A stretch of DNA of 64,000 nt from assembly GCA_964036045.1 (NCBI GenBank), contig OZ038378.1, positions 74,090,001-74,154,000 of the forward strand, given 5' to 3'. The position numbers were made by a program, and so were the translations under genes. Positions 6,726-35,615 of this stretch are shown piece after piece. The DNA comes from Eutreptiella sp. 'Long Island Sound 2002'. Taxonomy: Eukaryota; Protista; Euglenida. The notes under the pieces were generated by a model that made no database searches, had not been told where the DNA came from, and saw nothing but the letters and a program-made list of their open reading frames with translations. Each line of letters opens with the position of its first letter. Positions within the stretch are counted from its first letter, which is position 1.

Positions 6726-6836
6726 TGCCCCATATGCCTGGACCGCCCCGCAAACACAAGCCTAAGTTGTGACCCCGGGCACAGGCTGTGCCAGACCTGC
6801 GCCAACGACCGGAGACTACCGAGATCCCCAGTGTGC
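6726..6836 (+). pseudogene. C3HC4 RING finger (copy A; 7th ligand Cys replaced by Ser)
   Basis: Manual translation: CPICLDRPANTSLSCDPGHRLCQTCANDRRLPRSPVC. Confidence 0.8.
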
Positions 6837-7337
6837 CGCAGCATGCTGGAACCGAGGGTACCCCCCCCACCCCTGGGTGACCCAACATATGCGTACTTTT
6901 ACATACAAATATACAACAACCGGCTACTCACGTACAACTATAGTTTGCCCCCCGATCCGCCAATGCCGCTGGCATACAACATATGTAGCCAAATAACCAG
7001 CACAACAGGCCAACTGTGGGAGGTACACCCGAGGAATGATCTCCCCTACTGCCATATCGCAAGACACAGACTGCATAGCCTCACACACACAAGAGATGGT
7101 TTCCAGATGGCCATATCCATACGGTATGGGCTGTTTTTGGCCCACCCCTTACAGCATGACCTACTCCTAGAGTACGACATCACCGACTTGGTACCACCGG
7201 TCACGGACGTAGACCACCCACGGCATACACACCACAGTATAAACCCACACGCTACCCCAGACGTCACCTATCCACAGCACACCCAATGCGTCCTAGATGC
7301 CACACAGGACGGTGATGTGGAACCGAACCCAGGCCCA

Positions 7338-9960
7338 GACAACAACACCCCACCCCACGGCATGGTACACACCCGGGCGGAAAACTATGAAAGGAATACA
7401 TCCGGACTACATACCGACCATCGCGACCCAAAGGACGTAGAGGAAAGCCCCTTGGGCGTCGAGACCAACCCACACACCCCATTAGAGGACAACACGACAC
7501 GGGAACCCCCCTAGAACGGGGAATCTAACACACACCCCGACCACCACGCAGACGGATTTAGCTACTCCCCCCCACCCCCCCACGAGGACACATAGGCATA
7601 CACGTTCCACGAAGACGGCAATAACCCCCTAGATAACTCACCCATACACACACCAACGGAATACCACTTGATAGAGGAACTAGTAAAACTCAATACGGGA
7701 ACGCCACAGCAACCAATGACAACAATAGAACAGGAAACACTAAAAGCCTCATCGTATATGACGCACAGACCAAACTGAAAGCGTACTTAACAAAACACCC
7801 CGACCGTGCGGTGACCACAGAACACACTCGGCGGCAGACGCAAGAAGGGGTATGGTATGACAAGAAAACCTACCAACTCCCCCTGTTTACGCAACACACG
7901 CTGCGCAACGTCATGAGGGTCATACATGAGGCAGACTCTGACGGTATACACACCGTATCATAGATGGCCGAGGCACAACGGTTCACAGTCTACACAGAAG
8001 CCGACCATCAAGGGAACCCAGACATCCGGAACAAGACATACCTACTCCTACCAGACGCAACCGGGACCCGCCGCAACCATGACCGACCGATGCAACGTGC
8101 AGCCATACAAACGGAATGGGGCGGAAGTGAGGACGAACGAGTCCACCAAATCCTGCCTGCTCTCAGCGACCGAGGGGCCAAGGAACAGATTCTGGCATAC
8201 GAAGCTGACCGACAGGATTCCACAGCACTGCAGACCTACCGCATGGATTGCCTCCATCGTGCTCCACTATGGAAGCTAGCCCGCTACGTCAGAGGAGTAT
8301 ACCAATTCGACGAATTCCCCGCACGCAAGTGGTCCCCGGAACGAAACACCTTAGTCTACCACCTGCAGCCCACACCCATCATGGTCCTTCACCCGGACAA
8401 CACCAACAAGATGGGACACGAGCCCGCACACCAAACTTACACACTCACGAAGGGCACACCCATACAGGTGGGACTGGAGGACCGCAAAGATACACTACAA
8501 CCAGACTCGCCCAAGACTACGGTAGTGGTTGAGTGCCCACCAGAATTGGGCATTAGGACACGAGACGCATTTAGGAAACACATAAACGGACACCAGTCTG
8601 ACGTCGCCTCCACCATAGCAAGCAAGGACCCACACAACACCTTCTGGTGGAAGTGTGCCTCAGAACACACGGCGGGACAAAGTGGGTCGCACGCCTGGAG
8701 ACTACACCTGCCCATGCAACTACTGCCCAGACTGACGCAGGCACTGTAAACAATAAAAAAGGAAGAGGAAAACGGCGGAAACCCCGGACCCTAGTGGCTC
8801 ACTGAAACCGACTACGAAAGCCTATACATCCTGAGACAACAATGCACTGAACATAAAGAAGACAAAATCACATCGGTACAGGAAATCTTAGGCGACATAG
8901 ACAGGGAGTAGCTGGAGCTAGGAAGGAGCATCGCATCATTCCTCAAGGGCTTCCGATCAGTAGACTCCTACCGCCTCCTAATACAGTTTCAGCCAGACGC
9001 AGACCGACGCTTGATTGCCCAACTATTGAAGGGCATGAAAAGCTATGAACTGTTCCACGTAATGACCAACGTCATACTCAACCGCAACAACTGGACACAG
9101 TCTACAAGCCGCTCCAGGAACATCAAGCGGCCGCCCAAACCAACCAGAAGTGACGCCACGACGGTGTTCGTAGGGTGGACACAGCGCGCAGGAGACGACA
9201 CGGCGAAAGTCGTGGCATCCTTCTTTGGATGTTGGAGTAGTTGGAAGCCCGAACCCAACATGTGGAGCGAAGCAGGGTACACCTACGCCTCACTCCAATA
9301 CCAACATGCCACAGCAGTGGCCCTTAGCGCCGGACAGTACATCGGAGTGGCACCCGGTGAATACGTACACATAACACTATGAGACGACAAAACGGACACA
9401 CATGTTACCGAACGCATCGACCAGATGCTCTCGCACAAATTGCCGCACGAGATGGGCGACAACGTAGCATTCCGGAGAGGCATGAAGGCAGGGAAACAAT
9501 TGGGCGCGGACATGATGACAGAACGAGTCATCAGGGAAATCAACAGGGAAAAACAGCTCCTCGCGGAACCCGAACCCATCAACGTGGCGGGCTGGGACGA
9601 GGCCATCATGACAGAACTCGGTCATACTAACGACGACGTGCCACCAACGGACCTCCACCGGCACGTGACCACCATGGACACGGACGGACCCCACGACCAA
9701 CAATCCAACAACACAGACAAACCCGCACCCACACACCCACGACCGCCAAACCAGGCACAGAAAACGAAAGCCCACAACGAAACGCCGCAAAAAACACCCA
9801 CAAAGACGACACCGCCACCCAAAAAAAAAGAAGGCAACACGAACATCCCCACAAACCAACCAGCAAACGGATGGAACGGCTGCCTTCACCGCCAACACCA
9901 AATACAAAGGGAAAAGTAAGGGGCCGCCAAAAAACCCACAGGGCGAAGGAAAGAAGGGAG
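7338..9960 (+). pseudogene. ORF1-like core of copy A with RRM-like domain (~9161-9330) and basic C-terminal tail
   Basis: ORFs 7964..8749, 9011..9382 and 9425..9919 are pieces of one frame conserved in B and C. TVFVGWTQ...VVASFFG...AGYTYASLQY resembles RNP2/RNP1. Confidence 0.65.
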
Positions 9961-10479
9961 GTGCCTTTTCCTCATGCCCTTCATCGCCATAATGGCCCTC
10001 CACCTACTCATGGTGCCCACCACACATACAGAGGGACCAGTGCTCCTGCTCCCTATGATACAGAGAGCACGCAGGAGGGACACCCCACCCCTACGACACC
10101 GGCACGGCAATAAGCGGGACCCAACCCCTCGCAGCTACCGTATGTGGCGGCCCTGCTTGTTACTACTCTATATCGCCTGCTTCTTCCACACCCCGACCGC
10201 CCCTAACACAAGGGTGCCAAGCCGCTACTACCGCACACCGGTATCCACCACTACGGTAACCAGCCCCCACAACACACGATACGACAACAATTGGGTCCTC
10301 CAATGCGGGGACGTTCACCCCAACCCCGGACACCAAAGGATATACCAGCTCCGGCGCGATTGCCGCAACGTGCCGGGACCCCCCGTCCCGCTTCTTGACA
10401 TAGAGGAATACTAACAGCACCTGGTGGTCAACACAAACCGACGGTAAGACACTCGAGATGACACGACCAACGCAGAGGA

Positions 10480-11160
10480 CCAGGACAGGAAACTGGCCGG
10501 CTCGAACATACAAGGCGCACAGGGCTCTGTCACCCTACAGCGCTGGGCCAGTGTCCTCCACCTAATGAGCCAGTGTCGTATCGACTTTTGCGGCATTCAA
10601 GAATAGAACCCGTGCTTCCCTATGCCGGAGGCAGCCACAACAGCATTCAACATTAACTATAAGTGCTAGGCTGCGAACGAGCCACGAGTAGCATTCATCG
10701 TCCGCAACACTGTGGTCTCCCACGTCCTCGAAACGTTATACTCACCTAACGGATCAGCGGGGGCCAGCAGGCTGCAGCTCCCCAATAGCCCCCGCCGGAC
10801 CATAGCGTGCGTGTACTGCAAATTCAGCCGCCAGGACAAACAAGAGGTAGACCTCTTCCTGTAGTCCCTCCAACCATATGACATTATTATGGGGGATTAC
10901 AATGATTACATCTCGTCGTCAAACCCGACACAGCCGTGGCAGGAAGACCTAGCCAACAGCGTGTTCCTCGACCCATTACACGCCAGTAGCTAGCCGCCCG
11001 ACCCCCGGCAATACTACACCCGCATACCAAGGCATGGACGACCACGTCGCCAGGACGCCATATTGGTTAGGCAACAAATACCCAACATACCCTGGACCTA
11101 TTATGACACAACACAAATGCCCATACCAGATCATAGTCTGGTCCCCCTTGGCATCCGCTG
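10480..11160 (+). pseudogene. Apurinic-like endonuclease (EEP) domain, copy A
   Basis: KLAxxNIQG...GIQE, MGDYND, R.DAILVRQ and PDHSLV motifs, interrupted by stops. Confidence 0.85.
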
Positions 11161-11833
11161 GAGGATAGGGGCACCCGACCCACTCCGCAGAAAACCGCAG
11201 CCCACGGTCTCGAAGTTTTGCACCACACACTTCCAACGCTTTGCCAACTCCATATCCACCCTACCCGTAAAGGACACCGACCCACCCCCACACACAGCAC
11301 GGCACATCCTGTCGGCAATCGCACACACGGCACGACCACGGCACTATACACGCACTAGGACGCCAACCACGGCAATCTGCTCGGAAACCTCGGATCCCAG
11401 GGCACGGTTACGCGAATACGGGGAAGCACAGGAGCACCACATACGGAAACAAATCGGCAAACTCCGCCGGGCAGCAGTGCACAGATCCGGATACCTCTAT
11501 AAAATGGTCAAGAGGTGGCGCACCGGACTCATAGCACAAGACACGCCGCGGCCTTCCATAGGAGGAACACAACACATCCTGAACCACTTTGCGGGCGACC
11601 CAACATACGACGATGACACGTGCCAACGACTGATACGAAAACATGTACGCCACCACACATGGAACACCACGACCCCAACATACGAGGAGAACCTGAGGTG
11701 CCTGCTGGCACCAAAGAACAAATCAGCCGGACCCGATGGTGTACCTCCGCACCTGCTCCGGCACCTACCTAACCACATACAGCAACAACTGTACCAGGCA
11801 ATCATCGCAGTCTGAAACGGACAAAACATCCCA

Positions 11834-12973
11834 GTGGCCTGGCTGCAGTCAAGGGTAGTGCTCATTTACAAAAAGAAAGACCCCCAGGACCCACGAAACT
11901 ACAGGCCGATCTACGTTTCCAGAGCCATATATAGCATACTCACACGTCTCCTCCTGACGCGCATATCTAGAGCCATGACCCCGGGACTACTAGACATGCA
12001 ACACGGTGCCATACAGGGCCAAAACACCACGACCCTAGCCACAAGACTACTCAACGACTTACACACACAAGACGGGTACGTGGCCCTCCTCGACGTAGCC
12101 AAAGCTTTCCCCTCGGTCCCTCAACTAATGCTAACTGGGATCGTCAAGGAGGCAGGGGCACCAGAAAACATCATACGGATGCTTGGAGAGATATACCAGC
12201 ACACACCGGCCGTATTGACCGTCCACAGACGGGACCTCCCCATACGTCCCACGAGGGCCATGAATGAGGGGTGCCCCCTCTCCCCAACATTATTTCTCTT
12301 ATACTACGACATAATACTTAGGGAAACCAAAGAGCGTTGCCCGGGAGCCCACCTATACATGTTCGTCGATGACATCGCGGTGCGCGCACCCACGAAGAAA
12401 TCGCTACTTCACACCCTAGACACACTCCACGAAGTGGCATACACAATGGGGCTACGCTTCAATAAGGCCAAAACCGAAGTATACCACTGTGCTAAGGACT
12501 ATAGCCTAGAACCTATCACATGGCAGCACCAATTGATCCCCGTGCGGCCACCTATATTGAGGTACCTGGGTCACGTTCTAGCCCATCCCACACAAGAAGA
12601 CATAGTGTGGGACATGGTGACCGCACAATTGCACCACGTTATAGCGGCTTACAGGACCCTACCGCTTAACACCTACGAAAAGGTTGCCATCATAAACGCC
12701 GTCCTCATCCCTCGATGGACCTACAGGGGGCTATTCTTCGGGAACAGAGCACGGATAGCTCTATGGGACGACATACTCCTACAGTACAACAGGCACACAC
12801 CCGGGATAGAACAACAAATGAACAAGCACCGACTGACTACCAACCTCAGCCACGGGGGACTAGGTCTACGTCAGTTATGGTGGTCCTACATCACCCGGTG
12901 GGTTACACTTGGGCAGCAAGAGGTGCAAAACAAGGGCCCCACACAACATCTCACCGCCACCGAGTATAAATAG
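11834..12973 (+). pseudogene. Non-LTR reverse transcriptase, copy A (largest intact block)
   Basis: VVLIYKKKDPQDPRNYRPI, LLDVAKAFPSV, EGCPLSPTLF, LYMFVDD, GLRFNKAKT, YLGH, HGGLGL. Confidence 0.95.
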
Positions 12974-13254
12974 GTTGATGTTGTCCGAGCCCTAGGGGGC
13001 ACGGTGGGTCAGCGCATATCCCAACCCAGGCAACACCAGCCCCTCTCGGCGGGCCTATACGACTCAGAGAGCTCGGAGGAGGACCAGGAGACACACGCCG
13101 GGAAAACGCGGCCGGCTACCAGCCGTCTGGACTATGGCTGGATAAACCCACCGGACGAGCCAGCCACAGAGGAAACCCACGAGGTCTACTAGACACTACC
13201 GCACCAACAGAAGATCCATGGGATCACTGTACACTACACGGGAGAACCCACCAC

Positions 13255-13680
13255 CACGAGGTGGTATACTGATGGGTCGAGACGACACGGACGAGCGGGA
13301 GGGGGCATATACAACGGAAACTACTGCGCAGCATTTCGGGTGCACGGCCCCCAGCAAGTGTATCGGGCCGAGACAATCGCATGCGCGTTGGCTTCTGAAC
13401 TGGCCAGACCAGGGGACGACATCATACTTGACAACCAAAGTGTGGTTAACGCCACACCTCTAAAACGAAAAGGGGTAGTCAAAGACTAGGACTACCGCGA
13501 CATAGGCTACCACAACACCTCTTCGAAGCAATTGACGATACGCTGGACTCCAGGGCACTGTGACGATACGCTGGACTCCAGGGCACTGTACCGTTGCGCA
13601 AGCCACCACGTATAACGACTACCGGGACATTCAGGGGAACAACCACTCCGATGTCCTAGCCAATATCGGCGACAACCTGC
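13255..13680 (+). pseudogene. RNase H domain, copy A
   Basis: WYTDGSRRHGRAGGGIY, YRAETIA, IILDNQ, IRWTPGH, GNNHSDVLA. Frameshifted by a 28-bp duplication. Confidence 0.85.
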
Positions 13681-16339
13681 CCATGGACTGCCAACAACCA
13701 CAACCCCGAGATATTGTCACCATTGGACAAATCATGCCCACGCCTGCCAAGGCATGGATTATGCAAGTGCGTAAACAAAAACATACACCAGAAGTGCACT
13801 GCATGAGCTGGCTCCCCATGAAACAGTACAGACGAAACGCGTGGACCCCATGGCTCTGGGGACAGGTAAGGTGGTGGGTACCAGGTTCCCCTTGGGAGAG
13901 GACACCCACCCTACGCTCCAAATGTGGCGAACGACACGGAGCATGAGTGCAGTCAAGATTGGCGTATTGTCCCGCCGGGGGCGAGTTCTGGGACCTGTGG
14001 CGTAAGAGCTGAACTGATTGGGCCCAACACACCTACCAATGGCAGCAAACGGCCACCAGCCACGAGCTCTGGCTCTGTGCCAGGCTGCTCGTTCCAATGT
14101 CCCTCGTTGACGCCATACCCACCACGGAACGACATAAGCTACGGACAGAGGTAGGCCTATTTCAGTTTCGCATGATACAGGCTGTCCAAACCCTAAGGCA
14201 GAAACTCGCAGACCCTACACCTCACCAGCTACCGTCACCCCTATGGCTGACAAAGTATGGTGCACAAGCACTGCCGCCGCGGGAAACGCCACACACCCTA
14301 CGCAACCACCGCGGAGCGCCCATGCGGAGCGGCACGAAACGAAAATGTAGGACCGAGGTCGAAACGGCGGAGCCCATAGACCCCGACCAATTGATTTGTG
14401 ATGCACGCGCTGAAAACGACAACGATGCGGTGGCATGGCTAACAAGAGTGCAAGCAAGTGACACAGCCCAGGAACAAACCCAGAAGCGTCGGCGGATCAG
14501 TGTTGCCGCAGAGCGGTGGGAGCAGTACAAAAAGACCGCCAACAGATGTGCACAAGAGCACGGACAGCAATCACACGACACATACCTCAGCAAACACGCC
14601 GCAGAGGTAACACGACGGCACACTGCACGCGTACTACACCAACACACTAACCGCCAAAACAGACTATCACATGCTGGTGACCAAATTGATCACAGAGCAG
14701 ACGGCAGCACAACGACTGCACAACACACATACCCACATGTGCCAGGTACGAAAACAATGGTACGAGCAGGCGAAATACGACACAGTGACGTGTTATGTGG
14801 ACACGAAAACGTTGCTGCTAATCTGCAAGCGATACGAGAGGATGTGCGTTGAAACCAACAAACTGCCGGACCATCACCTGCGGCAGGCACAATACATGTG
14901 GTGCCAACAAGAGCACATGGCGAACATGACACAATGGTACAACAACGACTGCAACCAAAAGGCAACAGAATACAGGCACGCAACCCGACAAGCACGACAG
15001 ATAATATACCTCATACGGAAACGATCACGAGAACATTGGGATCCCACTTTGTGGGAAATCGCATTGCAACCTCTACCCAAACAACACAAAACACACTGGG
15101 ATCCAAACAAGTGGGAAATACCACTGACACGACCACAACGATCCCAACGGGAAACCATGGGGGCGCAGTCATGAGCTCCAGCCCGTATGCACACCCTGGC
15201 TCTTCCGAAATCCGGACTCTGCAGTGAACTTGGCCCACAGTGGCCCATGGCACTTTATGAACTGGCCTATTTCATAAAAAAAAAGTCTTTGCGGCTGTGG
15301 TTTGTGGGGTTGTGGTATGTTCGGCTATGTTGTGTGGGCACATGGTCTGCTGCATCCTGGTGTGTGGCGTTGTGTCACATCTAGTCGTATGTGAAGATGT
15401 GTTGTGGGGCTGCACTGTAGCCTTGGTGGGTTGTGGTGGGTTTTCGACGTAGGAAAAAATTTGCAAGGGCATCGAATTCTTCTTGCATTTTTTTTTGCCA
15501 TCTCGTTTTTTTTTCCGTTTTATGTTTGCAGTTAATATTTCATAATTGGAGTGCCAGCACTTTTTTTTAATCTTAAACGAGAACAAGACCAAATTAACAT
15601 TCAACGAGACGCTACAAACGTTCTTGCAGGGTATGCAGGCATAGTTCACGGAAAATCTGGTAGCCTTGGGCTTTGCGGTGTGGAGCTGTCACAAGTGGCG
15701 TTGTGGGGTGTGGGGCTGTTTGGTTTGCGGCTGCTGGGTGTCGGGCTGCTAGTGTAGGGCTGTGGTTTGTAGGGTTGTCGTTTGTTGAGCCACAGGCTGT
15801 GGGGCTGTGGGGTGCCAAGCTATTTGCGTCTGGGGCTATGGTGTGTGTGGCCGTGGTGTGTGCGGCTGTGGTGTATGGGGTTGTGGTGCGTGTGGTTGCG
15901 GGGGGTAGGGTTGTCGGCCGGGGAGCTACAGGATGGAGGGCTGTGGCAATGAACGTGGATAAACAAATGAAAAAGAGGGTGTTAATGTGGGTCTTCATGG
16001 CACAAGTGCAGATGGTCGGCCCCATGAAAGACGCCACGAGACGCCTAGGTGATTTTGGGGTGATGGACGATGCCTTGTTGTTGCCACTTGGTCCCAAAAA
16101 GGAGGCTCCGGCAGTCTTTGGTTTGCCACCGTTGGGGAAGCCCTCAAACAACGACACAACCCAATCATGCAGACCATGCTGAATTTGTTCACCCAGATGG
16201 GACAAGCAATGTACATAATGAATTTGTAGTGTTGTTGCTATGTGCCTTGTCAACCGCCGGCAACAAAGGTTCTAATACCCCCACCGATGGTTGAGTGGAT
16301 AAGAGGCACCCCGGCTCTGTACCCACACCATGCCCGGAC

Positions 16340-16460
16340 GCTGGGGACCAGTTGCACCCCCATTTCCTCCCATCTCCCCCCATTTCTCCCCATTTTGCCC
16401 CATTTCCCCCATTTTCCCCCAACCCCCCCCCCTTTTTTCATTTCGACCATTTTTCCTCCG
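16340..16460. repeat. Degenerate CCCCATTTT(C) tandem repeats
   Basis: ccccatttcctccc/ccccattttgcccc/ccccattttccccc. The same unit forms the array at 43590-43720. Confidence 0.7.
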
Positions 16461-18700: not shown

Positions 18701-19319
18701 GAGGTTTGGAGAGGATCACGCTGACGTGCCGATAGCTGCGGAATTAAGATCGACCGGCGATAAGCCGGACGGCAACGCCGGGGAAACCAGCCCATGAGTT
18801 ACTGACACATCATATAACTAAGGCCACCCTGAGGTGAGCCCGCGCCTTAAGGACACGTCCACTGCGGCCTGCCACAAACCAAGGATGCCGTGCCTGCGAG
18901 AGGTACGGCCAGAGATGGGCCAGGCTACCACGCCAGTCGGTGTGGAAACGGCCGACGGCCCCCAACAATTACCACGACACGCCGAGGTAGGAGAGGCCCA
19001 GACAGGCAGACACAACCACCATGGGGTGTGCTATCGCCCTAAGGCCGCAGTGCCCTGGTGTTTGCAGGGCACCGCACACTGCGACGACCGTGAACAGACC
19101 GCAATGCGACTGTGATCAGCGTATATGTGACTCGTGCACCACCTATACACGTTTGTGATTGTCAGCAACAGGCATAGGCCCCCCTCCCAGGGCAAACCCC
19201 CCCCTCCCCCAGGGGGGCTCACGCTGGAGTGGCCCACTACCCGCCGAAGGGCACCCTACCCCCTTAACAAGCAGCAGATCCACCCCACCCAAGGTAGGAA
19301 GACACGCGACCACACCGAC

Positions 19320-24285: not shown

Positions 24286-27200
24286 CGGAGGATATACCAG
24301 CTCCGGCGCGAGTGCCGCCCTGTGCGAGGACCCCCCGTCCCTCGCCACGACATAGAGGAACACGCTAAGCACCTGTTGGTTAACACGAACCGACAGTACG
24401 ACAGCCTGGACAACGTGACCAACGACCAAGACCGAGACATGAAACTGGCCACCTGGAAGATACAAGGCGCGCACGGCTCCCTTACTCTACAACGCAGGGC
24501 CAGTGTTCTCCACCTTGTCAAACAATGTCGTATCCACCTCTGCGGCATTCAAGAGTATAACCCGTGTTTCCCGCTGCCGGAGCAGCCACCACCGCAATCA
24601 ACAACGTCTACAAGCGCTACGCTGCACCAAGGAACGAACCACGCGTCGCATTCCTCATCCGCGACACTGTGGTCTCCCATGTCCTCGAAACGTTATACTC
24701 ACCTAACGGACTAGCGGGGGCCATCAGACTGCAGCTCCCCAATAGCCCCCAGCGGACTATAGCCTGCGTCTACTCCACATTCAGCCGACAAGACAAAAAA
24801 GAGGGAGACCTCTTCGCACAATCCCTCCAGCCATACGACATCATAATGGGGGACTGCAATGACGACATATGGTCGTCCGACCCGACAAGCCCTTGGCAAC
24901 AAGACCTAGCCAACAGCGTGCTTCTCGACCCGTTACACGCAAGTAGTCAACCGCCCGAGCCCCGACACTACTACACACACATTCCAAGGCATGGACGACC
25001 ACTTCGCCTGGACGCCATATTGATTAGGCAACAAATAACCAACATACCCTGGACTTACTACGACACTATCCAAATGCCCATATCGGACCACGCCCTTGTT
25101 TTACTCGGCATTCGCTTGGAGGATAGGAGCCCCTAACCAACCCCATAGAAAACCGTAGCCATCGGTCTCGAGGTGGTACACCACACACTTCCAGCGCTTT
25201 ACCAACTCAATCAGCATCCTGTTGGCTATCGCCCACGCGGTACGGCCACGACACCCTAAATGGACCAAGACGCCAGGCCACAGCAACGTGGTCGGAAAAC
25301 CCAGGTCTCAAGGCGCGGCTACGGGAGTTTGGAGAGGCTCAAGAGCACCACTTTCGGAAGCACATTGGCAAGCTACGCAGAGCGGCGGCAACTAGATCGG
25401 GTTACTTCTACAAAAAGGTCAAGAGGTGGCGCACCGGACTCATTGCGCACGACACGCCACAACCTCCGATTGGAGGAACACAACACGTCTTGAACCACTT
25501 TGCCGGTGACCCAACATACGACGAGGACACGTGCCAGCGACTGATTCGGAAGCATGTACGACACCAGACATGGAACACATCCACTCCAACATACAATGAA
25601 TACGTGAAGTGCCTGCGGGCGCCAAAGAAAAAAACAGGCAGACCCGATGGGGTACCACCCCACCTGCTCCAGCACTTACCCAAACACATGCTGAAACAGT
25701 TATACCAGGCAATAATTGAAGTCTGGAACGGGCAAAACATCCCAGTCGCCTGGCTGCGGTCAAGGGTAGTGCTCATATGTAAAAAGAAGGACCCACAGGA
25801 CCCACCAAATTAGAAGCCGATATACGTATCCACCGCCATATATAGCATCCTCACACGCCTCCTCGTGATGCGTATATCTAGGGCCATGACCCCAGGACTA
25901 CTTGACATACAACACGGGGCCCTACAAGGCCGCAACACCACGACCCTAGCCACAAAGCTACTAAACGACCTACACACTCAAGACGGGTAAGTGGCCCTCC
26001 TAGACGTAGCCAAGGCATTCCCCTCGGTCCCCCCACCAATGCTGACCGGGATCGTCAAGGAGGCAGGGGCACCGGAAAACATGATACGAATGCTCGGGGA
26101 AATGTACCAGCACACGCCGGCCGTACTGTCCCTGCATGGACCGGACCTCCCCATACGCCCCACTAGGGGCATGAAAGAGGGGTGCCCCCTCTCCCCAACA
26201 TTATTCCTCCTGTACAATGACATACTACTTAGGGAAACCAAGGAACGATGCCCCGGAGCCCACCTTTACGTGTTCGTCGATGACATCGTGGTACGCGCAC
26301 CCACGAGGGACTCACTCTTGCACACCCTAGATACACTCCACGAAGTGGCACATACAATAGGGCTACGCTTCAACAAGGACAAAACCGAAGTGTACCACTC
26401 GACCGAGGACTATAACGTGGAGCCAATCACATGGCATCACCAGCTGATCCCCTTGCGGCCACCCATAATGACTTACTTGGGCCACGTACTAGCCCACCCC
26501 ACACGGGAAGATACCGCGTCGGACATGGTTACCACAAAAGTGCAGCACGACACAGCGGCGTATAGAACCCTGCCGCTTAACGTAGGTAGCCATCATCAAC
26601 GCCGTCCTCATCCCACGATGGACGTACAGGGGGCCGTTCTTCGGGAACAGATCCCGGATGGCGCCATGGTACGACATGCTCCTACATTACATTAGGGACA
26701 CAGCCGGGATAGAACAACAAATGAACAAACACCGACTCACAACAAATCTAAGCCACGGGGAACTAGGCCTACGACAACTGGGGTGGTCCTACATCACCCG
26801 GTCGATCACACTGGGGTAGCAAGAACTACAAAACAACGGCCCCACACAACAACTCACCGCATCCCAATACAAATATATCGACGCCGTCTGAGCTCTAGGG
26901 GGCACGGTGGGCCAACGCATATCCCCACCTAGGCAGCACCGCCACCTATCGGCGGGCCTATACGACTCGGAGAGCTCGGAAGAAGACCAGGAAACAAACG
27001 CGGGGAAAACACGGCCGGCCACAAGTTGCCTAAACTATGGCTGGATGAATCCCCCCGACGAACCAACCTCAGAAGAGACCCTTGAAGTGTCCCAGGCACT
27101 ACCACACCAACGGAAGTTCCACGGGATCACCATACATTACACAGGAGTACCCACCACCACAAAGTGGGATACAGACGGGTCAAAATGACAAGGAAGAGCG

Positions 27201-29100
27201 GGAGGGGGCATATACAATGGAAACTACCGCGTAGCGTCCCACGTGCATGGACCTCAACAGGTTTACCGGGCTGAAACAATCGCCTTCGCGCTTGCCTCCG
27301 AACTGGCCAGCAAAGGGGACGAAATCGTACTTGACAACCAAGGTGTGGTGAAAGCCACCCCTACAAAACATAAAGGGGTAGTCAAAGACCAGGACTACCG
27401 CGACATAGGCTACCACAACGCCTCCTCGAAACGACTCACCATACGATGGACTCCTGGGCACCGCACCCTCGTAAAAACAACCACGTACAACGACTATAAG
27501 GACATAGGGGGGAACAACCACTCCGATGTGCTTGCGAATATGGGCGACAACCTGCCCATGGATTCCCAACAACCACAACCCCATGATATTGTCATCATCG
27601 GACAAATCATGCCCACGACTGCAAAGGCATGGATTATGCAAGTGCGTAGACAAAAACATACCCCGGAAGTATACTCGGTGAGCTAGCTCCCCATGAAACA
27701 TTACAGACGAAACGCGTGGACGCCATGGCTCTGGGGACAGTAAGGTGGTGGGGAACAGGTGCCCCGTGGGAGCGGTCCCCCACCCTATGCTCCAAATGTG
27801 GCCAACAACACGGGGCGTCGGTGCAGTCAAGAGTAGCGTACTGCCCCGCCTGGGGTGCATTCTCGGACCTGTGGCGCAGGAGGTGGACTGACTGGGCCCA
27901 GCACGCCTGCCAATGGCGAAAAACGGCCACCAGCCTTGAACTCTGGGTATGTGCCAGACCACTCATCCCGCTGGCCCTCATCAATGCCATCCCCACCACA
28001 GAAAGACACAAGCTACGGGCAGAGGTAGGCCTCTTTCAGTTCCGCATGATCCAAGCCGTCCAAACCCTAAGGCAGAAATTCACCGACCCCACACCGCAAC
28101 AGCTGCCATCACCCCTATGGCTGACTAAGTTTGTTGCGCAAACACTACCACCACGAGAAACGGCACAAAACCTACGCAACCACGTCGGAGCGCCAATGCG
28201 GTGCGATAGGAAACGTAAATGCAAGGCCTAGCTCGCGACAACGGAACCCATAGACCCCAAGCTGTGGCTCCGGGAGGCGCACGCTGCAAACGACGACAAG
28301 GCGGTGGCATGGGTTTTGAGCAATCACGAGGCAAACACGTTGAATCAGGAAGATCAAACTCAGAAGCGTCGACGCCTCGATGGTGATGCTAGCGTTGGAA
28401 CATTACCTAACGGCTTAGACAAGTTGGCAAAGGAGCACGCGCAACGCGCCCACAACGCGTACTGCAGCGCACACACATCAGAGGTAACACGGCGGCACCT
28501 ACGCGAACTACGCACAATATACGCCAACCCACGAACAGCCAAAACAGAATACCACCCCCTCGTGTCAAACGTGATCAAAGAATATGTAGCGGCACAACGA
28601 CTACACAACACATATACAACAATGTGCCAGGAACGCCGACAATGCTACGAACAGGCAAATCGCGACACAATGAAATGGTACGCGGACGTGAAAACATCAC
28701 TCCTTCCATACAAAAGATATGAGAGAATGTGCACAGACACCAACTTGCTGCTGGCCCACCACATGCGACAGGCACATTACACGTGGCGTCAATAGGAACA
28801 CATCATGAACTTGACGCAGGGGTTCAATAACAACTGCCTGCACAAAACAACACTATACTGGGACGCATCCACACAAGATCACCAGACAATATACCTCATA
28901 CGGAAACAACCATAGGAGCAATGGGACCCCATCTTGTGGGAAGTCTCATTACAACCCTTACCAAAACGACACAAAGCGCACTGGGATCCAAACGAGTGGG
29001 AAATCCCGCTAACACGACCACACCCACCTCAACGGGAAACCATGGGGGCCCAGCCACGAGCTGAAGCCCGTATGCACACCCTGGCACTGCCGAAATCTGT
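23908..29100 (+). pseudogene. ORF2 of copy B: hydrophobic leader - 2A-like - APE (24440-25115) - RT (25745-26800) - RNase H (27165-27560) - Cys/His knuckle (27788-27844) - C-terminal domain
   Basis: KLATWKIQG...CGIQE, MGDCNDD, LRLDAIL, PISDH; ALLDVAKAFPSV, GMKEGCPLSP, LYVFVDD; WDTDGS, RWTPGH; CSKCGQQHGASVQSRVAYC. Confidence 0.92.
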
Positions 29101-30739
29101 ACTTAGCTTTGAACGTGGCCCACAGCGGCTCCTGGCTCATTCTGAACCGTCCTATTTAATGAGAAAAAAAAACAAGTCATCTCTCGTAGTTAATGGCCAT
29201 GGCGAAAACGGTGCAACACGATATAAAAACAGGTAATCTGCAAGAGACGCGATGTCACTCGCAAGAAGAGGTGAAGTGTCAAAGGTTTTGGGCATCGTGC
29301 TAGGGGAACGGCACGATTGCATCCGTGGCGGAGGGCGATTCTTCTCGTGTTGTCTTTCGGAAGATCGTAGGGTGGACTTTGAAGTGGCCGTTCATTTGAT
29401 CAACGCGTGTTGTGGTGGCGATCTTATGCCATACAACAGGCCAAGTGCTGCAAGTGATCTCAAGTCATGTGCATCAGCAACACCAGCTGGGACGGGATCG
29501 GAGGCACTAAGTAAACACGTCCCTGCGCAGCGGAGAGCTCACTTTCTGAGTGTCTTTTTTTTGTCGTTTGACCCTCCATGCCCGTTTTGCCCGGGGAACG
29601 TGCCCCAATCGCCAATAAGAGGTCGTGCTCTCACATCTGACATGAAGTCCAAGCATCGTGCTATGGCAGGGCCTTGGGCCTTTTTCTTGACGATAGCCCT
29701 TTGGGAAATTAGGGGACACGGCGTACCGGGACCACTCCGGCAGGAGCCGGATATTGCCTACCCCCCAGGGGAACCCGTACTACCCGCCCTGTCGCACACC
29801 TTTCGCTTTATAAGCATGGGGAATATGACATCGTCCCCCGGGGCTGCAAACCGGGGTCGCAGCAGGGCGTCACCATGCAGCTCTGCCGACATCGACTTCA
29901 AACCACCAGCCCCAAACCTATAAGCAGGCCGAGATCAAATTTCCCATGGGCTCGATGGCACACTCCTGGCTGCGTCACCCACAGGCTACTCGGAGGACGA
30001 CGACGACCGACCCGCGAGGACAGCTGCATCACCAGCTGCTGGCCGAGGGAGTTCTCTGGATTGGCACAACACTAAGACCAACGCCCGCCGGACAACCTAC
30101 GAGGACCCAGTACCCCACGGATCTGATGGGCTGCCCCTGGAGGCATTAGCTAAGGACCATGCAGGAGATGACACCGTGAAATCCGCCAGGGCCGCCGCCC
30201 ACAAGTTTGCCAACCAAGGGGAATCACTAGAGCGAAATGGGACCGAAATCGCTGATCGCCGAGCAACCTCCAAAGACGCAGTAACCCAGAGACTCGATGA
30301 GATGACGCTGGGCTCGCCTACCAACGACCAGTCGGAGATCAACTTTGTCCAGTCAACGCGGAGCCCCGAGACTGAGGTCAACGATCACTGGGTGATCTAT
30401 GAGAGTATGGACAAGATGACGTTATCAAGGACCCCATCATTCCGGGCGCACAGCCGATTGCAATCAAAGATGGGATACGATCCAGCATTCCGAGGACCAA
30501 CTGGTCAACCGCAGAACGCCCTGCACAACGACGGCGCCCATCAAGCACCTGGAGGCCCTACGCAAGCAGCCGCCAACGTGGGTGACCTTCTGGACCGCTG
30601 CGAGCTTGAGAATGACAGCCGCGTCACCAGGTATGTGCACCCTCTAAACGTAGGCCGTGACCCGACGTGTGTACGTCAGAGAGTCACGACACCCGCACTG
30701 ATGGTGACGCTACGTCCTCCGAACTATAACTCAAAAGAT

Positions 30740-31091: not shown

Positions 31092-31307
31092 CATGGCACT
31101 ACCCAAACCACACCGTGGACGTCACGTATGACCCCACGAAGGGGCCAGACCAACAACTGGGCCTACACCCCGTGTTGATCGTGACACCGCGGCTCTTGCA
31201 ACTCTCGCAACGCTTACAATCTAGGAATTGTCGTAACACGGCCTTCTCACATCGCATCCACCCCTTCTTGCCAACCCACCTTGCGTGGCACTGTAGGTGG
31301 GCTGATC

Positions 31308-31520
31308 GTGAGCGGCGCCGGACCCCCGGTTTGCCTCCCAGCAACTGGGTCAGTCAAGGGCATCAAAAATGCCCTCCATCACCTCACGCCTCACCTACCC
31401 CCACCGCAACACCAGCGGCTGTTCTACCACGGGCAGCCGCTCGGAGACAAAGACCCAACCGCAACGACAGCACACGGACCCGTCCACTTGACGTTGCGTT
31501 TGGTGGGACTGAAGGGAGGA
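31308..31520 (+). CDS. Ubiquitin-like domain ending in Gly-Gly (copy C)
   Basis: LIVSGAGPPVCLPATGSVKGIKNALHHLTPHLPPPQHQRLFYHGQPLGDKD...PVHLTLRLVGLKGG in ORF 31281..31835. Confidence 0.8.
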
Positions 31521-33649
31521 GGGAGACGGTCAAGCAGGGACACGGATACCGAAAGCACCAGTGACAACGGCAGTGACAGCCACGGCCGCCGGAAAAAGTC
31601 CCGGAAACGCTGCTCCAAGGGCGAACTCACCCAGGCCTTGCGGGCAATGACGTCCCTTGCAAACTCTGTAGCAGAAATTTGCCGATCAATCCGGCAACCA
31701 CCGCAAACCGGGACACCCGAAGCCCCGCCACCACATGAACCAACGCAAACAGACACGGAGACCAACCCCGCGACCCAGCCCAGCTGCCACATGGCGAGCC
31801 CGAGCCACCACAAGCGCGTAGGCGCTATTGCCTGAACATCGGCACGCGCCACGGTGACCGGCAGGTCATTCTGCATGACCCCGGATATCAACCCCAACCC
31901 CCACCCCCTCCCCCGACACCGGTGGCAGAACTACTGTGGTTCTACCGCAACCGCTATCTCCTGGAAGTCCCCTGCGCGGTACTAGTCCTCCAACACGGCC
32001 ACAGGGGCATGACCCAACAACCCCACCGGACCCCCAGAAGGCGGAACCACACATGGGGCGGACGGCGGCACAGCCGGCACCCTACCACAGTGATGCACCC
32101 CTCCCACCACAGGCATAGTGCAGGCCACAGGCACAGTACAGAGCAGTGGTGGACAGACATGGCCGTCACGTGGTACCAGAGGACAGACCGGGGACATGGG
32201 CACAGTTCAGCGAACGAAATGCCGCCGCACTAGAAATGCTCCGCACTGACACCGGCGCAGACCCGCATGGAGGCTACATGTCGACCTGGCTTTCACGGGA
32301 CACGCCCCTGCCACCGGCAGAGTGCCCTCAGGACCATCGACACCAGCAAACGCACCAAGGTGGCTACCCGGCCTACGACACGCCACCGCTGCCGGGACAC
32401 CCGCGACAGCAACAACAGGTGCACTACACACCTGACGCACCGGGTCTCCGGCCCCCCATCTACCAAACCAACCCCCCCCCCCCCCCCAGCCACGTGCGGA
32501 AAGGGCGCCACCGCACGGAGTCCACGCGGAACAGGAACCGGAACAATCCAACTCGGGACAGATTGGAGTGTTCCCTTTCACCGGAGGTTGGGACGGTGTG
32601 GCCACACAGCCCGGTCAACAGGCACGACCGCCGCGACAGCAGCGATGGAAAAGGCGCCGGTCCAAGACACACAAAGGGGAACTGGGAACGGCCGTCCCCA
32701 ACATCCCCACCGTCGCACCCCCGGGCCAGCGCGCCTCCAACGTGTCCCCTGACGTGCTGAGGGAGGTTTGCGCATGCATGTGCATGAACGGGAGAACACG
32801 TGGACCGGTGCCTCTCTCCACCCACAACCTCACGCCCTCCTCCATAGTGATCATCACCACGGAGAGCCGATACCGGCGTGAGAAACCAAGGTCTGGAGCT
32901 GCCGACCGCGCTCACGACCCGCGACGCACGGACGACACGACATCCGCGCAATTAAGAGCGGCTGGAAACGGGACACATCATATAATCATGGTCTTAAGGA
33001 CACACCTACCGCGGCTTGCCCAGACCGCAGAGGCCATGTCTGCGAGGGACACGCACAGCGATGGGGCAGGCTACCACGCCAGCCGTTGTTCCCACGGCCG
33101 ACAGCCCCCGGCATTCACCCCGACACGCCGAGGCAGAACAGGCCGAGACAGGCAGGTACAGCGTCTGGGACGCATCATATAACTATGGCCTCAAGGACAC
33201 ACCCCTTGCGGTTGGCCACCAACCGTGGAAGCCATGCCCGCGTGAGGTACGGGCGGAGACGGGGCACGCCACCACGCCAGCCGGTGTGGAAACGGCCGAC
33301 GGCACCGCAGCAAGACAGGACCAGACAAGCAGACACAACCACCATGGGGTGTGCTGTCGCCCTAAGGCCACAGCGGCCTGGTGTTCGCAGGGCACTGCAC
33401 ATTGCAACGAACGCAAACCAGACGGCACTGTGACTGTGATCCACGGACCTGTGATTTGTGCACCACCTGCACACGTATGGGATTGTCAGCAACAGGCCGA
33501 GCCCCCCACCCCCCCCAAGGACAACACGCCCCCCTATGGGAGGGGGACCGCGCTGGAATAACCCACTGCCCCGCCGAAGGACACCGTACCCCCCCAACAA
33601 ACAGCAAATCAACCCTGCACGAGATGGGACGACACGCGACCACACCACC

Positions 33650-35615
33650 GATGGAGACATCGAGAAAAATCCGGGGCCCCATGACACAGGGTTGACACAG
33701 AATGAAATCCCGCCTCACCACAAGGCGATGGTCACGCGAGTGGCGAGTGAAATAGAGATGGCCTCCAACCCCCACTATCCCGTTAAACTATACAAATATG
33801 TGACCCAGGCACTCACGGAGGCACTCAAAAGCAGGCAACGGGCTTCCACCCCCCCTCCAGAAAACAACACACGCACACCACGCGCAAAATCGGCGTCCAC
33901 ATATGGCACCTCAGAAATTCCATCACCAGAGGTCACTTCATCACGCGGGATGCAACTCCCAGGCACACTACACTCACCCACCCCAGACACATCGGACTCC
34001 ACTGTGAGAACACAAAAGCATAGGTCACCGATGGGACTAAACATGACCACCGCCCTCGACCTGTTATGCCCCTGATGCCACATGGCTGATTTTGTCTACT
34101 CCCGCTGCACCACTTGTAAATACTTCGCCATACACCAACCGTACACCTCAAACATGGTGGCCCGCCGCTTGTACAAAGTAATGCCCCCGGTCACCTTGTA
34201 CCCAAGACAAGGATCCTGGCAAGGTGCCGATCCTACAACCACCACACACGCCTGCACGGCGTCACGGCCGCAAGCATCAATTACACCACCGACATCGCGA
34301 GACAACACGAACGGATGGGTACACAACGTCACCAACGACGGAGGCGTCGAGTCCAATCCTGGGCCCATTCCGCCGGGACCCTCGGCAAAACGCACACGCT
34401 ACAACCAAGACACCCCACCCACGTACAACACGCCCAGGATGTTACACAAGCGTACCATGGACAACCCAATGCTGCCTGAACAAAAACCACGACGCACACA
34501 AGTTGTGGACATAGTATACCAAGAGCACCACACACCAGCCCGGGTGTATAACCACCGCAAACGCAAAGCAGACGGCGTACCGGACTACCCACCTACGACA
34601 AAACGTCACATTAACGCGACCCACTGGGGTGCGCAACACACCCCCGGAGCACCGGTAAACATACGCCCGAAAAGGCCCTATGAGGACACCTTGGAACCCG
34701 CCACGACGGAACCACCACACAAAAAGATCCGCAAAACACAACGGCTTCGTAACCGCCCCTATCCAAGGCCGACAAGCTGGGACCACGACCCGAAACAGGA
34801 CGGGGACACAAAACCAAACCTCGGACTAACCCCACCCACACGAGTGGACCAAGCGACACAAACAACACCACTAAGAGATACGGGGATCCAGACACACAAC
34901 GTCCCACCTCCACCACCCCTACGGGCGGCACCTCCCCCCCAACAACCGAACAACCACACTGCCTCAAAAACGGGAAACGTGGACACAAGGGAGCAGCCCC
35001 GAGAGGACTGCCCCATATGTATCGACCACCCTGCAGACACAAGCCTAAGTTGCGGCCCAGGCAAGTCCCAACGACACCCGAATGGTGAGGTGCCCATTGT
35101 GCCGCCGCATGCTGGAACCAAGAGTACCCCCCCCCCCCCCGCCCCTGGACGACCCAACATACGAATACTGCTACGTACAAATATACAACAACCAACTACT
35201 TACGTACACGGACTATAGTTCGTCCCCCATCCCTCCCCTGCCGCCGGCATACAACGTATGGATGCAAGTCCCCAGCACGACCGGTCAACTGTGGGAGATA
35301 CACCTGAGCAATCACCCCCCCTACTACGCTGTTGCACGACACAAGCTGCATGGCCTTACGGACACAATATATGGTTTCCATATGGCCATATCACTACGGT
35401 ACCGGGTGAGAGTTTTAGCCCACCCCTTACAGCATGACCTACTCGTGGAATACGACATCACCGACTGGGTACCTGCACCTACGGGCTGAGACAACCTACG
35501 ACACACGCACCACACCGTTGATCTGCACGCCATACCGGACAAAAACCACCCACAACACACCGAATGGGTCCCAAATGCCACACACGATGGTGATTCGGAA
35601 CCAAATCCGGGCCCA
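33650..35615 (+). other. Four 2A/StopGo-like motifs in copy C (fifth removed by a deletion)
   Basis: 33650-33679 DGDIEKNPGP; 34337-34366 DGGVESNPGP; 34799-34828 DGDTKPNLGL; 35586-35615 DGDSEPNPGP. Confidence 0.85.

What the first reader, a model, noticed from the sequence alone, without database searches (positions are those of the whole stretch)
6726..35103. RING-HC finger set off as its own 2A-delimited module: Ubl plus RING in one LINE
Seen: C-x2-C-x11-C-x3-H-x2-C-x2-C-x8-C-x2-C is intact in B (20686-20796), has one ligand change in A (6726-6836) and is internally deleted in C (~35009-35103). It lies between 2A sites 3 and 4, followed by a Pro run and a conserved ~110-aa unknown domain (YEYCYVQIYNNQLL...QLWE.H...HPLQHDLL.EYDITD). 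Established: RING-HC fingers are typically E3 ubiquitin ligases. Inference: with the Ubl, the element may carry a small ubiquitin-pathway toolkit, for example to degrade a host silencing factor.
Basis: partly seen in the sequence, partly recalled or inferred. Interest (0 to 1): 0.8.

Follow-up and report, generated by a model that had tools for sequence, protein, structure and literature searches.

The report
RING ligase module in algal LINE
A family of jumping genes (LINE retrotransposons) in an uncultured green-pigmented alga carries, between two ribosome-skipping '2A' sites, a small conserved RING-finger protein of the type that usually tags other proteins with ubiquitin, an accessory I found in no paper on LINEs.

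Summary
The window has three diverged, broken copies (about 80% identical, + strand) of a 12-13 kb APE-type LINE. In each, a C3HC4 RING motif lies between 2A sites 3 and 4. It is followed by a proline run and an orphan domain of about 105 aa.

- **Copy state:** all eight ligands are present in copy B. Copy A has one Cys-to-Ser change. Copy C has a 17-nt deletion.
- **Correction:** the first loop is x10, not x11. Copy B also has a ~205-nt inversion (20906-21110) inside the downstream domain.

Six more copies from the same metagenome assembly show that the module is selected. dN/dS is 0.26 for the RING, 0.24 for the domain and 0.16 for the 2A sites, against 0.9-1.9 in shifted frames. E2-contact-type residues are conserved and the module is almost free of lysine.

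An exhaustive profile search found the orphan domain only next to this RING, in this one genome. No fold match was found.

A clear Ubl with a C-terminal GG occurs in a distant relative that has no RING. The two were therefore not shown to have been acquired together.

E3 ligase activity and any target are inferred, not shown. Verdict: a real, selected accessory module; a new variant of 2A-bearing LINEs.

The parts
2801..15284 (+). LINE copy A. Its 5' end is at or near the Ubl and it is broken by frameshifts. It holds an uninterrupted 350-codon stretch, 6462-7511, that spans 2A site 3 to beyond site 4.
   Evidence: Self-BLAST of the window, frame maps, short A run at the 3' end.
18844..29171 (+). 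LINE copy B. It is 5'-truncated and has no Ubl. It has many frameshifts.
31185..44408 (+). LINE copy C. It extends upstream of the Ubl. It carries a hAT-type insertion at about 42440-43769 and a deletion that removes 2A site 5.
2801..3034 (+). Ubl of copy A, ending LRLVGLKGGG. Its N-terminal part is degraded.
   Evidence: Translation and tblastn with the copy C Ubl.
31302..31523 (+). Ubl of copy C, ending LRLVGLKGGG.
   Evidence: Pfam ubiquitin E 0.0036, below the cut-off. PDB NEDD8 E 0.01. The homologous Ubl in L007 matches ubiquitin over its full length at E about 2e-6.
4394..5127 (+). Tandem repeats of about 192 nt, 3.8 copies, in the low-complexity region between the Ubl and 2A site 1 of copy A.
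   Evidence: TRF.
5809..5859 (+). Zinc-ribbon-like CPRC-x10-CxxC motif in the module between 2A sites 1 and 2. The last Cys is Ser in copy A; the motif is intact in P0007.
6085..6108 (+). 2A site 2 of copy A (DVEPNPGP). Counterparts: B 20020-20043, C 34343-34366.
6109..6524 (+). Basic module between sites 2 and 3, with KRTR, KRRR and KKIRK-type motifs that look like nuclear localisation signals.
   Evidence: Translation. 5.2% K and 13.7% R.
6525..6548 (+). 2A site 3 of copy A (DTAPNPGP; DTEPNPGP in most copies, with Thr at the V/I position). Counterparts: B 20482-20505, C 34805-34828 (degenerate NLGL).
   Evidence: dN/dS 0.15.
6726..6836 (+). RING-HC finger of copy A, with the seventh ligand changed from Cys to Ser.
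20686..20796 (+). RING-HC finger of copy B, with all eight ligands present.
   Evidence: Pfam zf-C3HC4_3 E 3.4e-5 and zf-C3HC4 20.8 bits against a cut-off of 21.
35009..35103 (+). RING remnant of copy C, with a 17-nt deletion and frameshift. C7 and C8 are read in the next frame from 35049.
6876..7187 (+). Orphan downstream domain of copy A, from the Pro run to ...EYDITD. The model shows four strands and two helices.
20906..21110 (.). Inverted segment inside the downstream domain of copy B.
   Evidence: Minus-strand matches in self-BLAST and tblastn.
35151..35465 (+). Orphan downstream domain of copy C, uninterrupted.
7314..7337 (+). 2A site 4 of copy A (DVEPNPGP). Counterparts: B 21284-21307 (NLGP), C 35592-35615.
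   Evidence: dN/dS 0.14.
10310..10333 (+). 2A-like site 5 of copy A (DVHPNPGH) at the N-terminus of ORF2, just before the APE domain. B has it at 24262-24285; it is deleted in C.
   Evidence: L007 has DVHPNPGP at the same place.
11816..12970 (+). Reverse transcriptase segment of copy A.
   Evidence: Pfam RVT_1 E 4.2e-24. The L004 homologue matches R2 RT at 2e-16 and L1 ORF2p at 2e-10 in the PDB.

Best explanation
**What it is (shown).** The window carries three dead copies of an APE-type LINE from an uncultured alga that has chlorophyll a/b antenna genes. ORF1 of this family is a polyprotein. It runs: Ubl with a GG end, a repeat-rich region, 2A site 1, a zinc-ribbon module, site 2, a basic module, site 3, the RING module, site 4, then a module of about 900 aa with no known relatives that ends in ...GKGKK-stop. 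ORF2 is in another frame. It starts with a hydrophobic leader and a 2A-like site, followed by APE, RT and RNase H.

The RING module is about 260 aa. It has a variable acidic linker, a 37-aa C3HC4 finger, a proline hinge, an orphan domain of about 105 aa, and a tail that ends in site 4.

**How it most likely works (inferred).**
1. StopGo at sites 3 and 4 releases the module during translation as a separate small protein.
2. Its RING recruits a host E2 charged with ubiquitin.
3. The orphan domain binds a partner. That partner is ubiquitinated to the element's benefit: either a host factor that restrains the element, or a chromatin or repair protein at the insertion site.
4. The near absence of lysine protects the module from tagging itself.
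5. The Ubl is probably a separate device: a junction cut after GG by host deubiquitinases.
For: **Layout**
- Frame maps and 2A sites.

**It is a RING**
- All eight ligands at canonical spacing in copy B and in L001-L005, six of nine copies.
- Synonymous TGC/TGT changes occur at three of the ligand codons.
- Only RING families hit in Pfam, E 3e-5 to 2e-4.
- The PDB hits that fall on the RING part of the profile are all RING E3s: RNF141, EHV-1 ICP0, RING1B, MIB1, Arkadia, cIAP, SIAH1.
- The RING part of the model overlays MEX-3C, TRIM21, TRAF6 and a mimivirus RING at 2.4-3.2 A over 45-51 residues.

**It is selected**
- dN/dS is 0.26 for the RING, 0.24 for the domain and 0.16 for the 2A sites. 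The linkers give 0.47 and shifted frames give 0.9-1.9.

**E2-contact-type positions (roles known from c-Cbl, BRCA1 and RNF4; my knowledge)**
- An aliphatic residue two after C1 in 9 of 9 copies.
- Pro after C7 in 9 of 9.
- Arg after C8 in 8 of 9.

**Lysine desert**
- The module has 0.4-1.4% K and 6-10% R. The other modules have 3.7-6.2% K, except the short zinc-ribbon module at 0.9%.
- Lysine deserts are described for components of the ubiquitin system (PMC10169902, PMC10665810).

**RING and orphan domain stay together**
- They are coupled in diverged subfamilies: P0058 (40% identical) and P0054. P0055 keeps the finger and the start of the domain; P0056 keeps only the domain.
- L008 and L009 keep site 4 right after the domain.
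Against: - No activity data exist, and there is no evidence of transcription or of the protein.
- All Pfam RING scores are below the curated cut-offs.
- The structure models have low to moderate confidence, pLDDT 50 and 63.
- The orphan domain has no relative and no fold match, so 'substrate receptor' is a guess.
- Site 3 has Thr at a position where only Ile replaced Val in mutational scans of two viral 2A peptides (bioRxiv 10.64898/2026.09.24.754024). Release at the N-terminal side may be partial.
- Every copy examined is broken somewhere, so no fully intact element was seen.
- The pooled pairwise dN/dS counts are not independent.
Confidence: 0.55

Rival explanations
1. The finger is a non-catalytic zinc module. 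It would serve as a scaffold for protein or nucleic-acid binding within the element's ribonucleoprotein, as proposed for PHD and zinc-knuckle domains of other LINE ORF1 proteins. It would have no ligase activity.
For: - Pfam scores are below threshold.
- Other LINE ORF1 or ORF2 N-termini carry PHD or CCHC fingers (PMC3708506).
- The two loops are short, x10 and x8.
- The neighbouring module also carries a small zinc ribbon.
Against: - The ligand order is C3HC4, not the C4HC3 of PHD.
- The three E2-contact-type positions are conserved, including the Arg after the last Cys.
- The lysine desert has no obvious reason in a plain scaffold.
Confidence: 0.25
2. The module is seldom free. Because site 3 is a weak StopGo site, the main product would be a fusion of the basic, NLS-like module with the RING module, and 2A site 4 alone would define its end.
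For: - Thr at position 13 of site 3 in eight of the nine aligned copies (copy B has Glu-Thr-Asp there) and in L009.
- V13 tolerated only Ile in scans of P2A and F2A (bioRxiv 10.64898/2026.09.24.754024).
- A basic module fused upstream would give the RING a nuclear address.
Against: - Site 3 is under strong purifying selection, dN/dS 0.15.
- It shares the W-x-x-D-x-T-x-DGD-x-E-P-NPGP context of sites 2 and 4. This suggests it is kept as a working 2A.
- Tolerance at position 13 was measured in other peptide backgrounds and other ribosomes.
Confidence: 0.3
3. It is a captured fragment of a host RING gene carried along by the element and decaying, with no function for the element.
For: LINEs do transduce host sequence. 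All three window copies are damaged in or near the module.
Against: - Purifying selection holds across copies that differ at dS 0.5-1.0.
- The module is kept in several diverged subfamilies.
- No host-gene relative of the orphan domain was found among 1.84 billion representative proteins.
Confidence: 0.03

Closest known systems
APE-type LINEs with a 2A-like site (L1Tc/Ingi, CR1, Crack, Rex1, L2; Odon et al. 2013, PMC3708506)
   Same: There is a 2A-like site in the N-terminal region of ORF2p just before the APE domain. This is site 5 here, and it is canonical NPGP in relative L007. The domain order APE, RT, RNase H is shared with Ingi-type elements.
   Different: The known elements have one site per element. 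Some have a PHD finger between the 2A and APE. Most lack ORF1. Here four further sites cut a long ORF1 into modules, one of which is a RING protein. Clade membership was not tested.
Algal LINEs with deubiquitinase domains (Josephin in Dualen and Haematococcus ORF2p, OTU in a Symbiodinium ORF2p; PMC8557442, bioRxiv 10.64898/2026.06.17.732966)
   Same: They are LINEs of photosynthetic protists that carry a domain of the ubiquitin system, in some cases together with 2A-like peptides.
   Different: Those domains remove ubiquitin and are fused to ORF2p. Here the domain is a ligase-type RING, plus a Ubl, and it sits in ORF1 as a separate 2A-flanked product.
Viral RING E3 ligases (herpesvirus ICP0 family, IAPs, arenavirus Z)
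   Same: They are small RING-HC proteins encoded by a genetic parasite. The EHV-1 ICP0 RING is among the best PDB sequence hits. ICP0 counters host silencing by degrading host proteins (my knowledge).
   Different: There is no homology outside the finger. The partner domain here is an orphan. The carrier is a retrotransposon, not a virus.
Picornavirus polyproteins with multiple 2A NPGP sites (PMC11512398)
   Same: Several StopGo sites in one reading frame release separate proteins. The sites look like duplicates of one cassette.
   Different: The carrier here is a cellular retrotransposon ORF1, not an RNA virus polyprotein.
Natural ubiquitin fusion proteins (ribosomal protein fusions, polyubiquitin)
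   Same: A Ubl that ends in GG is followed directly by more protein. This is the arrangement that host deubiquitinases cut.
   Different: The Ubl in the window family is highly diverged. Cleavage is not shown.

Membership tests
RING-HC (C3HC4) finger | Eight zinc ligands in the order C-C-C-H-C-C-C-C, with spacing C-x2-C-x(9-39)-C-x(1-3)-H-x(2-3)-C-x2-C-x(4-48)-C-x2-C. | tested here: met
   Copy B and L001-L005 have C-x2-C-x10-C-x3-H-x2-C-x2-C-x8-C-x2-C.
RING-HC (C3HC4) finger | A profile match at the curated threshold. | tested here: inconclusive
   zf-C3HC4 scores 20.8 bits against 21. zf-C3HC4_3 scores 24.0 against 27. Sina_RING scores 23.3 against 29.3. Only RING families are hit. PDB profile hits are RING E3s at E 0.01-0.9.
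RING-HC (C3HC4) finger | The cross-brace fold. | tested here: inconclusive
   The RING part of the model overlays solved RINGs at 2.4-3.2 A. However, pLDDT is about 60 and the Foldseek E-values are about 1 or higher (0.9-3.6).
RING E3 ubiquitin ligase | An E2-binding surface: an aliphatic residue two after C1, Pro after C7, and a basic linchpin after C8. | tested here: met
   I, V or L in 9 of 9 copies. Pro in 9 of 9. Arg in 8 of 9. This is sequence evidence only.
RING E3 ubiquitin ligase | E2-dependent ubiquitin transfer. | not testable with these tools
   Needs a biochemical assay.
2A / StopGo site | The C-terminal motif D(V/I)ExNPG followed by P. | tested here: met
   - Sites 1, 2 and 4 are canonical in most copies.
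- Site 3 has Thr for V/I.
- Site 5 has His for Glu and His, Gln or Asp for the final Pro. Both are variants of uncertain activity.
2A / StopGo site | Co-translational separation. | not testable with these tools
   Needs a reporter assay. Selection on the sites is strong, dN/dS 0.14-0.16.
APE-type non-LTR retrotransposon | A LINE-type RT with an APE endonuclease upstream of it. | tested here: met
   RVT_1 E 4e-24. Exo_endo_phos and RVT_1 occur on one L004 product. PDB hits are R2 RT and L1 ORF2p. RNase H is found in L007 at 5e-8.
APE-type non-LTR retrotransposon | An A-rich 3' end and 5' truncation of copies. | tested here: met
   Short A runs at 15284, 29171 and 44408. Copy B is 5'-truncated. 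Target-site duplications were not examined.
Ingi / L1Tc clade | RT phylogeny placing the element within the clade. | not tested
   No reference RT sequences were at hand. Only the layout (2A, APE, RT, RNase H) is alike.
Ubiquitin-like (beta-grasp) domain | Full-length similarity to ubiquitin and a C-terminal GG. | tested here: inconclusive
   - Window copies: Pfam ubiquitin E 0.004, below the cut-off. NEDD8 E 0.01. The GG end is present.
- Relative L007: ubiquitin at E about 2e-6 over residues 3-76, ending RLLGG.
PHD finger of CR1 / Crack LINEs | Ligand order C4HC3. | tested here: not met
   The order here is C3HC4. No PHD family was hit.

The most novel reading that the evidence does not exclude
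The element encodes both halves of a private tagging system. Its own Ubl would be freed with a GG end by host deubiquitinases. It would then be attached to a chosen host or element protein by the element's own RING ligase, with the orphan domain selecting the target. This would be a retrotransposon-encoded modifier-ligase pair.
Probability: 0.1. Interest if true: 0.85.

Novelty: new variant of a known kind. Interest (0 to 1): 0.6.

Why it matters
LINEs are usually thought to carry only what they need for copying: an RNA-binding ORF1 protein, plus an endonuclease and a reverse transcriptase.

This family has turned ORF1 into a virus-like polyprotein cut by at least four StopGo sites. It has also kept, under selection, a ligase-type RING protein with a private partner domain.

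If the RING is active, this would be a retrotransposon that writes ubiquitin marks. Only algal LINEs that carry deubiquitinases, which erase such marks, have been described so far. It would give a direct handle on how a LINE manipulates its host cell. The orphan domain should point to the host factor or chromatin target.

The sites also add natural examples of multi-2A use outside RNA viruses. They include conserved non-canonical variants, Thr13 and His19.

Tried and rejected
- **First structure prediction.** The RING plus domain with 13 family sequences gave pLDDT 50 and was unusable.
- **Second structure prediction.** With 18 sequences, including diverged subfamilies, it gave pLDDT 63. One row of that alignment was partly in the wrong frame.
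- **Fold searches.** Foldseek against the PDB and viral models gave nothing significant for the orphan domain. The top hits (MglB, Ragulator, AP-2 sigma) had rmsd above 10 A and were rejected as noise.
- **Pfam on the other modules.** There were no hits for the large post-site-4 module, the zinc-ribbon module, or the L007 ORF1 as a whole.
- **PDB on the other modules.** There were no hits for the large post-site-4 module or the zinc-ribbon module.
- **Rfam on the window.** No matches.
- **L007 ORF1 against the large module.** Only a marginal 78-residue match, E 9e-4, so homology is left open.
- **Bacterial hit.** P0061, a repeat protein found in the exhaustive search at E 7e-4, was rejected as spurious.
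- **PHD finger.** Rejected on ligand order.
- **Human origin.** Rejected. The copies sit in Mb-size contigs of a metagenome assembly beside chlorophyll a/b antenna genes.
Full report
**1. What is in the window.** A self-comparison shows three copies of one long element, all on the + strand and about 74-84% identical to each other. Copy A spans about 2801-15284, copy B 18844-29171 and copy C about 31185-44408. Each ends in a short A run. Copy B lacks the first ~5 kb, as expected for a 5'-truncated LINE. All three are broken by frameshifts and stops.

The 3' half encodes an endonuclease of the Exo_endo_phos type, a reverse transcriptase and an RNase H-like region.
- RVT_1 scores E 4e-24.
- A better preserved copy (L004) matches the R2 and L1 ORF2p reverse transcriptases in the PDB.

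This is an APE-type non-LTR retrotransposon.

**2. The observation.**
- Copy A has Ser at the seventh ligand.
- Copy C has a 17-nt deletion that removes the His and the following Cys and shifts the frame.
- 2A motifs occur only on the + strand and only inside the copies.
- The finger lies between site 3 (DGDTEPNPGP in most copies) and site 4 (DGDVEPNPGP).
- It is followed by a run of four to six Pro and a domain that runs to ...EYDITD.
- Copy A keeps an uninterrupted 350-codon stretch across the whole module (6462-7511).
- In copy B, 20906-21110 of the downstream domain is inverted.
- The canonical RING expression matches once in the six frames and never in 200 shuffles.

**3. Related copies.** A word-based protein search with the copy A module found 17 proteins. 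All sit on contigs of 0.36-7.8 Mb. Every one whose source I looked up belongs to ENA assembly ERZ25074135 at 33-48x coverage. I fetched DNA for six further copies of the module (L001-L006) and aligned all nine.
- All eight ligands are present in six copies.
- The other three carry one point change each (A, L006) or the deletion (C).
- Three Cys ligand codons vary between TGC and TGT, so the residue was kept through synonymous change.

**4. Selection.** I used Nei-Gojobori counts in the frame of copy A, pooled over all pairs.

| Region | dN/dS |
|---|---|
| Finger | 0.26 |
| Downstream domain | 0.24 |
| The two 2A sites | 0.16 |
| Linkers | 0.47 |
| Same columns in the two shifted frames | 0.9-1.9 |

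Deep pairs give the same picture: for L003 against L004, dS is about 0.9-1.0 and dN 0.12-0.16. The pairs are not independent and no tree model was fitted. Even so, the contrast with the shifted frames is clear. The module was under purifying selection while the family diversified, and the window copies decayed later.

**5. Is it a ligase-type RING?**
- Pfam hits are RING families only, just under their cut-offs.
- A profile of the module hits RING E3s in the PDB; one weak non-RING hit falls on the domain.
- The residue two after C1 is aliphatic in all nine copies. A Pro follows C7 in all nine. An Arg follows C8 in eight.
- In c-Cbl, BRCA1, RNF4 and others, these positions contact the E2 or prime the E2-ubiquitin conjugate. 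That statement rests on my knowledge, not on a test here.
- The module is almost free of lysine, with one to three K in 160-263 residues and 6-10% Arg. The other modules of the same element have 3.7-6.2% K, except the short zinc-ribbon module at 0.9%.
- Lysine deserts are described for ubiquitin-system components that must avoid tagging themselves (PMC10169902, PMC10665810).

Together this makes an active E3 the best reading. It remains an inference.

**6. The downstream domain.**
- Pfam and PDB sequence searches find nothing.
- An exhaustive HMM search of 1.84 billion representative proteins with a profile of the domain found 15 proteins.
- One of these, a bacterial repeat protein, is spurious. 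All the others are fragments of this element family.
- Where enough sequence is present, the diverged subfamilies P0054, P0055 and P0058 again have the finger directly upstream.
- Every locus I looked up is from the same assembly.
- With the diverged sequences added, AlphaFold gave a moderate model with pLDDT 68-78 over the domain. It shows two beta hairpins followed by two helices.
- Foldseek found no significant match in the PDB or in viral models. Only the finger overlaid known RINGs.

The domain is an orphan that travels with this RING. 'Substrate receptor' is plausible, but so are dimerisation and other roles.

**7. The whole element.** Overlapping intact stretches in different copies show one frame running from the zinc-ribbon module through sites 2, 3 and 4 into a large module (P0007, P0003, L004, P0008, P0015). 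That frame ends at a conserved ...GKGKK-stop, at B 23911 and C 38230.

ORF2 starts in another frame with a hydrophobic leader and a 2A-like site, DVHPNPG followed by His. The APE domain comes next. This is the position where single 2A-like sites are known in L1Tc, Ingi, CR1 and other LINEs (PMC3708506).

Sites 1-4 share the context D-x-T-x-DGD-x-E-x-NPGP, so they look like duplicates of one cassette.

Two variants bear on how well the sites work:
- Site 3 has Thr where Val or Ile is usual. In mutational scans of two viral peptides, only Ile was tolerated there.
- In the same study, His after the Gly kept more than 80% activity in cell-free systems and less in cells (bioRxiv 10.64898/2026.09.24.754024).

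Site 3 may therefore be leaky, and site 5 may still work.

**8. The Ubl.** Copies A and C, and loci L002, L003 and L006, have a ubiquitin-like stretch ending LRLVGLKGGG, 3.4-4.2 kb upstream of the finger. Its similarity to ubiquitin or NEDD8 is weak.

A distant relative from another sample (L007, RT 31% identical) settles its nature. Its ORF1 has a full-length Ubl ending RLLGG that matches ubiquitin at E about 2e-6. A canonical DVHPNPGP lies just before APE. L007 has no RING and no internal 2A sites in the 6.9 kb available.

The Ubl and the pre-APE 2A are therefore shared by both lineages. The RING module and the extra sites are seen only in the window's family. They were either added there or lost in L007. 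This weakens the idea of a paired toolkit. A GG end followed by more protein is what host deubiquitinases cut, so the Ubl may simply be one more processing junction. That is an inference.

I could not show that the Ubl and the RING share one frame. The 2.3 kb between them is repeat-rich and broken in every copy.

**9. Host.** One copy (L009) lies next to tandem chlorophyll a/b-binding protein genes. Their best named relatives are from Acetabularia, Dunaliella and Euglena, at about 40-43% identity. The host is an unidentified alga with chlorophyll a/b antennae. The contig is not human.

**10. Comparison with what is known.**
- Single 2A-like sites before APE, sometimes with a PHD finger, are known in LINEs (PMC3708506).
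- 2A peptides are now reported widely in reverse-transcribing elements (bioRxiv 10.64898/2026.09.24.754024).
- Algal LINEs with Josephin or OTU deubiquitinase domains are known (PMC8557442, bioRxiv 10.64898/2026.06.17.732966).
- Six full-text searches and the six papers read turned up no LINE with a RING ligase domain or a Ubl. Absence from this library is not proof.

I rate this a new variant of a known kind. It is a 2A-bearing LINE whose ORF1 has become a multi-2A polyprotein with a selected RING module.

**11. Limits.**
- No activity, expression or intact full-length copy was shown.
- The selection estimates are pairwise.
- The structure model is of moderate confidence.
- The LINE clade was not assigned.

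Noticed in passing
window 20906-21110: A ~205-nt segment inside the downstream domain of copy B is inverted relative to copies A and C.
   Followed up: partly
window 42440-43769: Copy C carries an insertion that encodes a hAT-family C-terminal dimerisation domain (Pfam E 5.5e-13). It is a DNA transposon fragment nested in the LINE.
   Followed up: partly
window 10310-10333 and 24262-24285; L007:2887-2910: The 2A-like site before APE reads DVHPNPG followed by His in nearly all copies. L008 has Gln, L001 has Asp and the distant relative L007 has Pro. A hydrophobic, signal-like leader precedes it. Whether it still causes skipping is open.
   Followed up: partly
window 5809-5859; P0007 residues about 10-30: The module between 2A sites 1 and 2 has a CPRC-x10-CxxC zinc-ribbon-like motif. 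It has no Pfam or PDB match.
   Followed up: partly
window 6109-6524: The module between 2A sites 2 and 3 is strongly basic, with several NLS-like KR clusters. It directly precedes the possibly leaky site 3.
   Followed up: no
window 6546-7334 and homologues: The RING module is a lysine desert (0.4-1.4% K, 6-10% R). The other modules have 3.7-6.2% K, except the short zinc-ribbon module at 0.9%.
   Followed up: yes
window 4394-5127: There are tandem repeats of about 192 nt (3.8 copies, 71% matches) in the region between the Ubl and 2A site 1 of copy A.
   Followed up: no
window 2728-2830 and 15285-15400: G/T-rich sequence follows the A run of copy A. Similar sequence lies just before its 5' end, after another A run at about 2713-2727. 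This may reflect a preferred target or a tandem head-to-tail arrangement.
   Followed up: no
window 633-1105 / 46734-47212; 17928-18698 / 47286-47458 and 50284-50893: Other repeated sequences in the window are unrelated to the LINE. They are presumably other transposon families.
   Followed up: no
L007:2656-2658: In the distant relative, ORF1 and ORF2 are in the same frame and separated by a single stop codon. This could mean readthrough, reinitiation or a recent mutation.
   Followed up: no
L006:13898, 17289, 20676: The pre-APE 2A-like site recurs three times at a spacing of 3.39 kb, so part of the element is tandemly repeated at this locus.
   Followed up: no
L009:6563-7958 (minus strand): Two adjacent chlorophyll a/b-binding protein ORFs lie next to a LINE copy. 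Relatives of 480 aa suggest antenna polyproteins. This is the only clue to the host's identity.
   Followed up: partly
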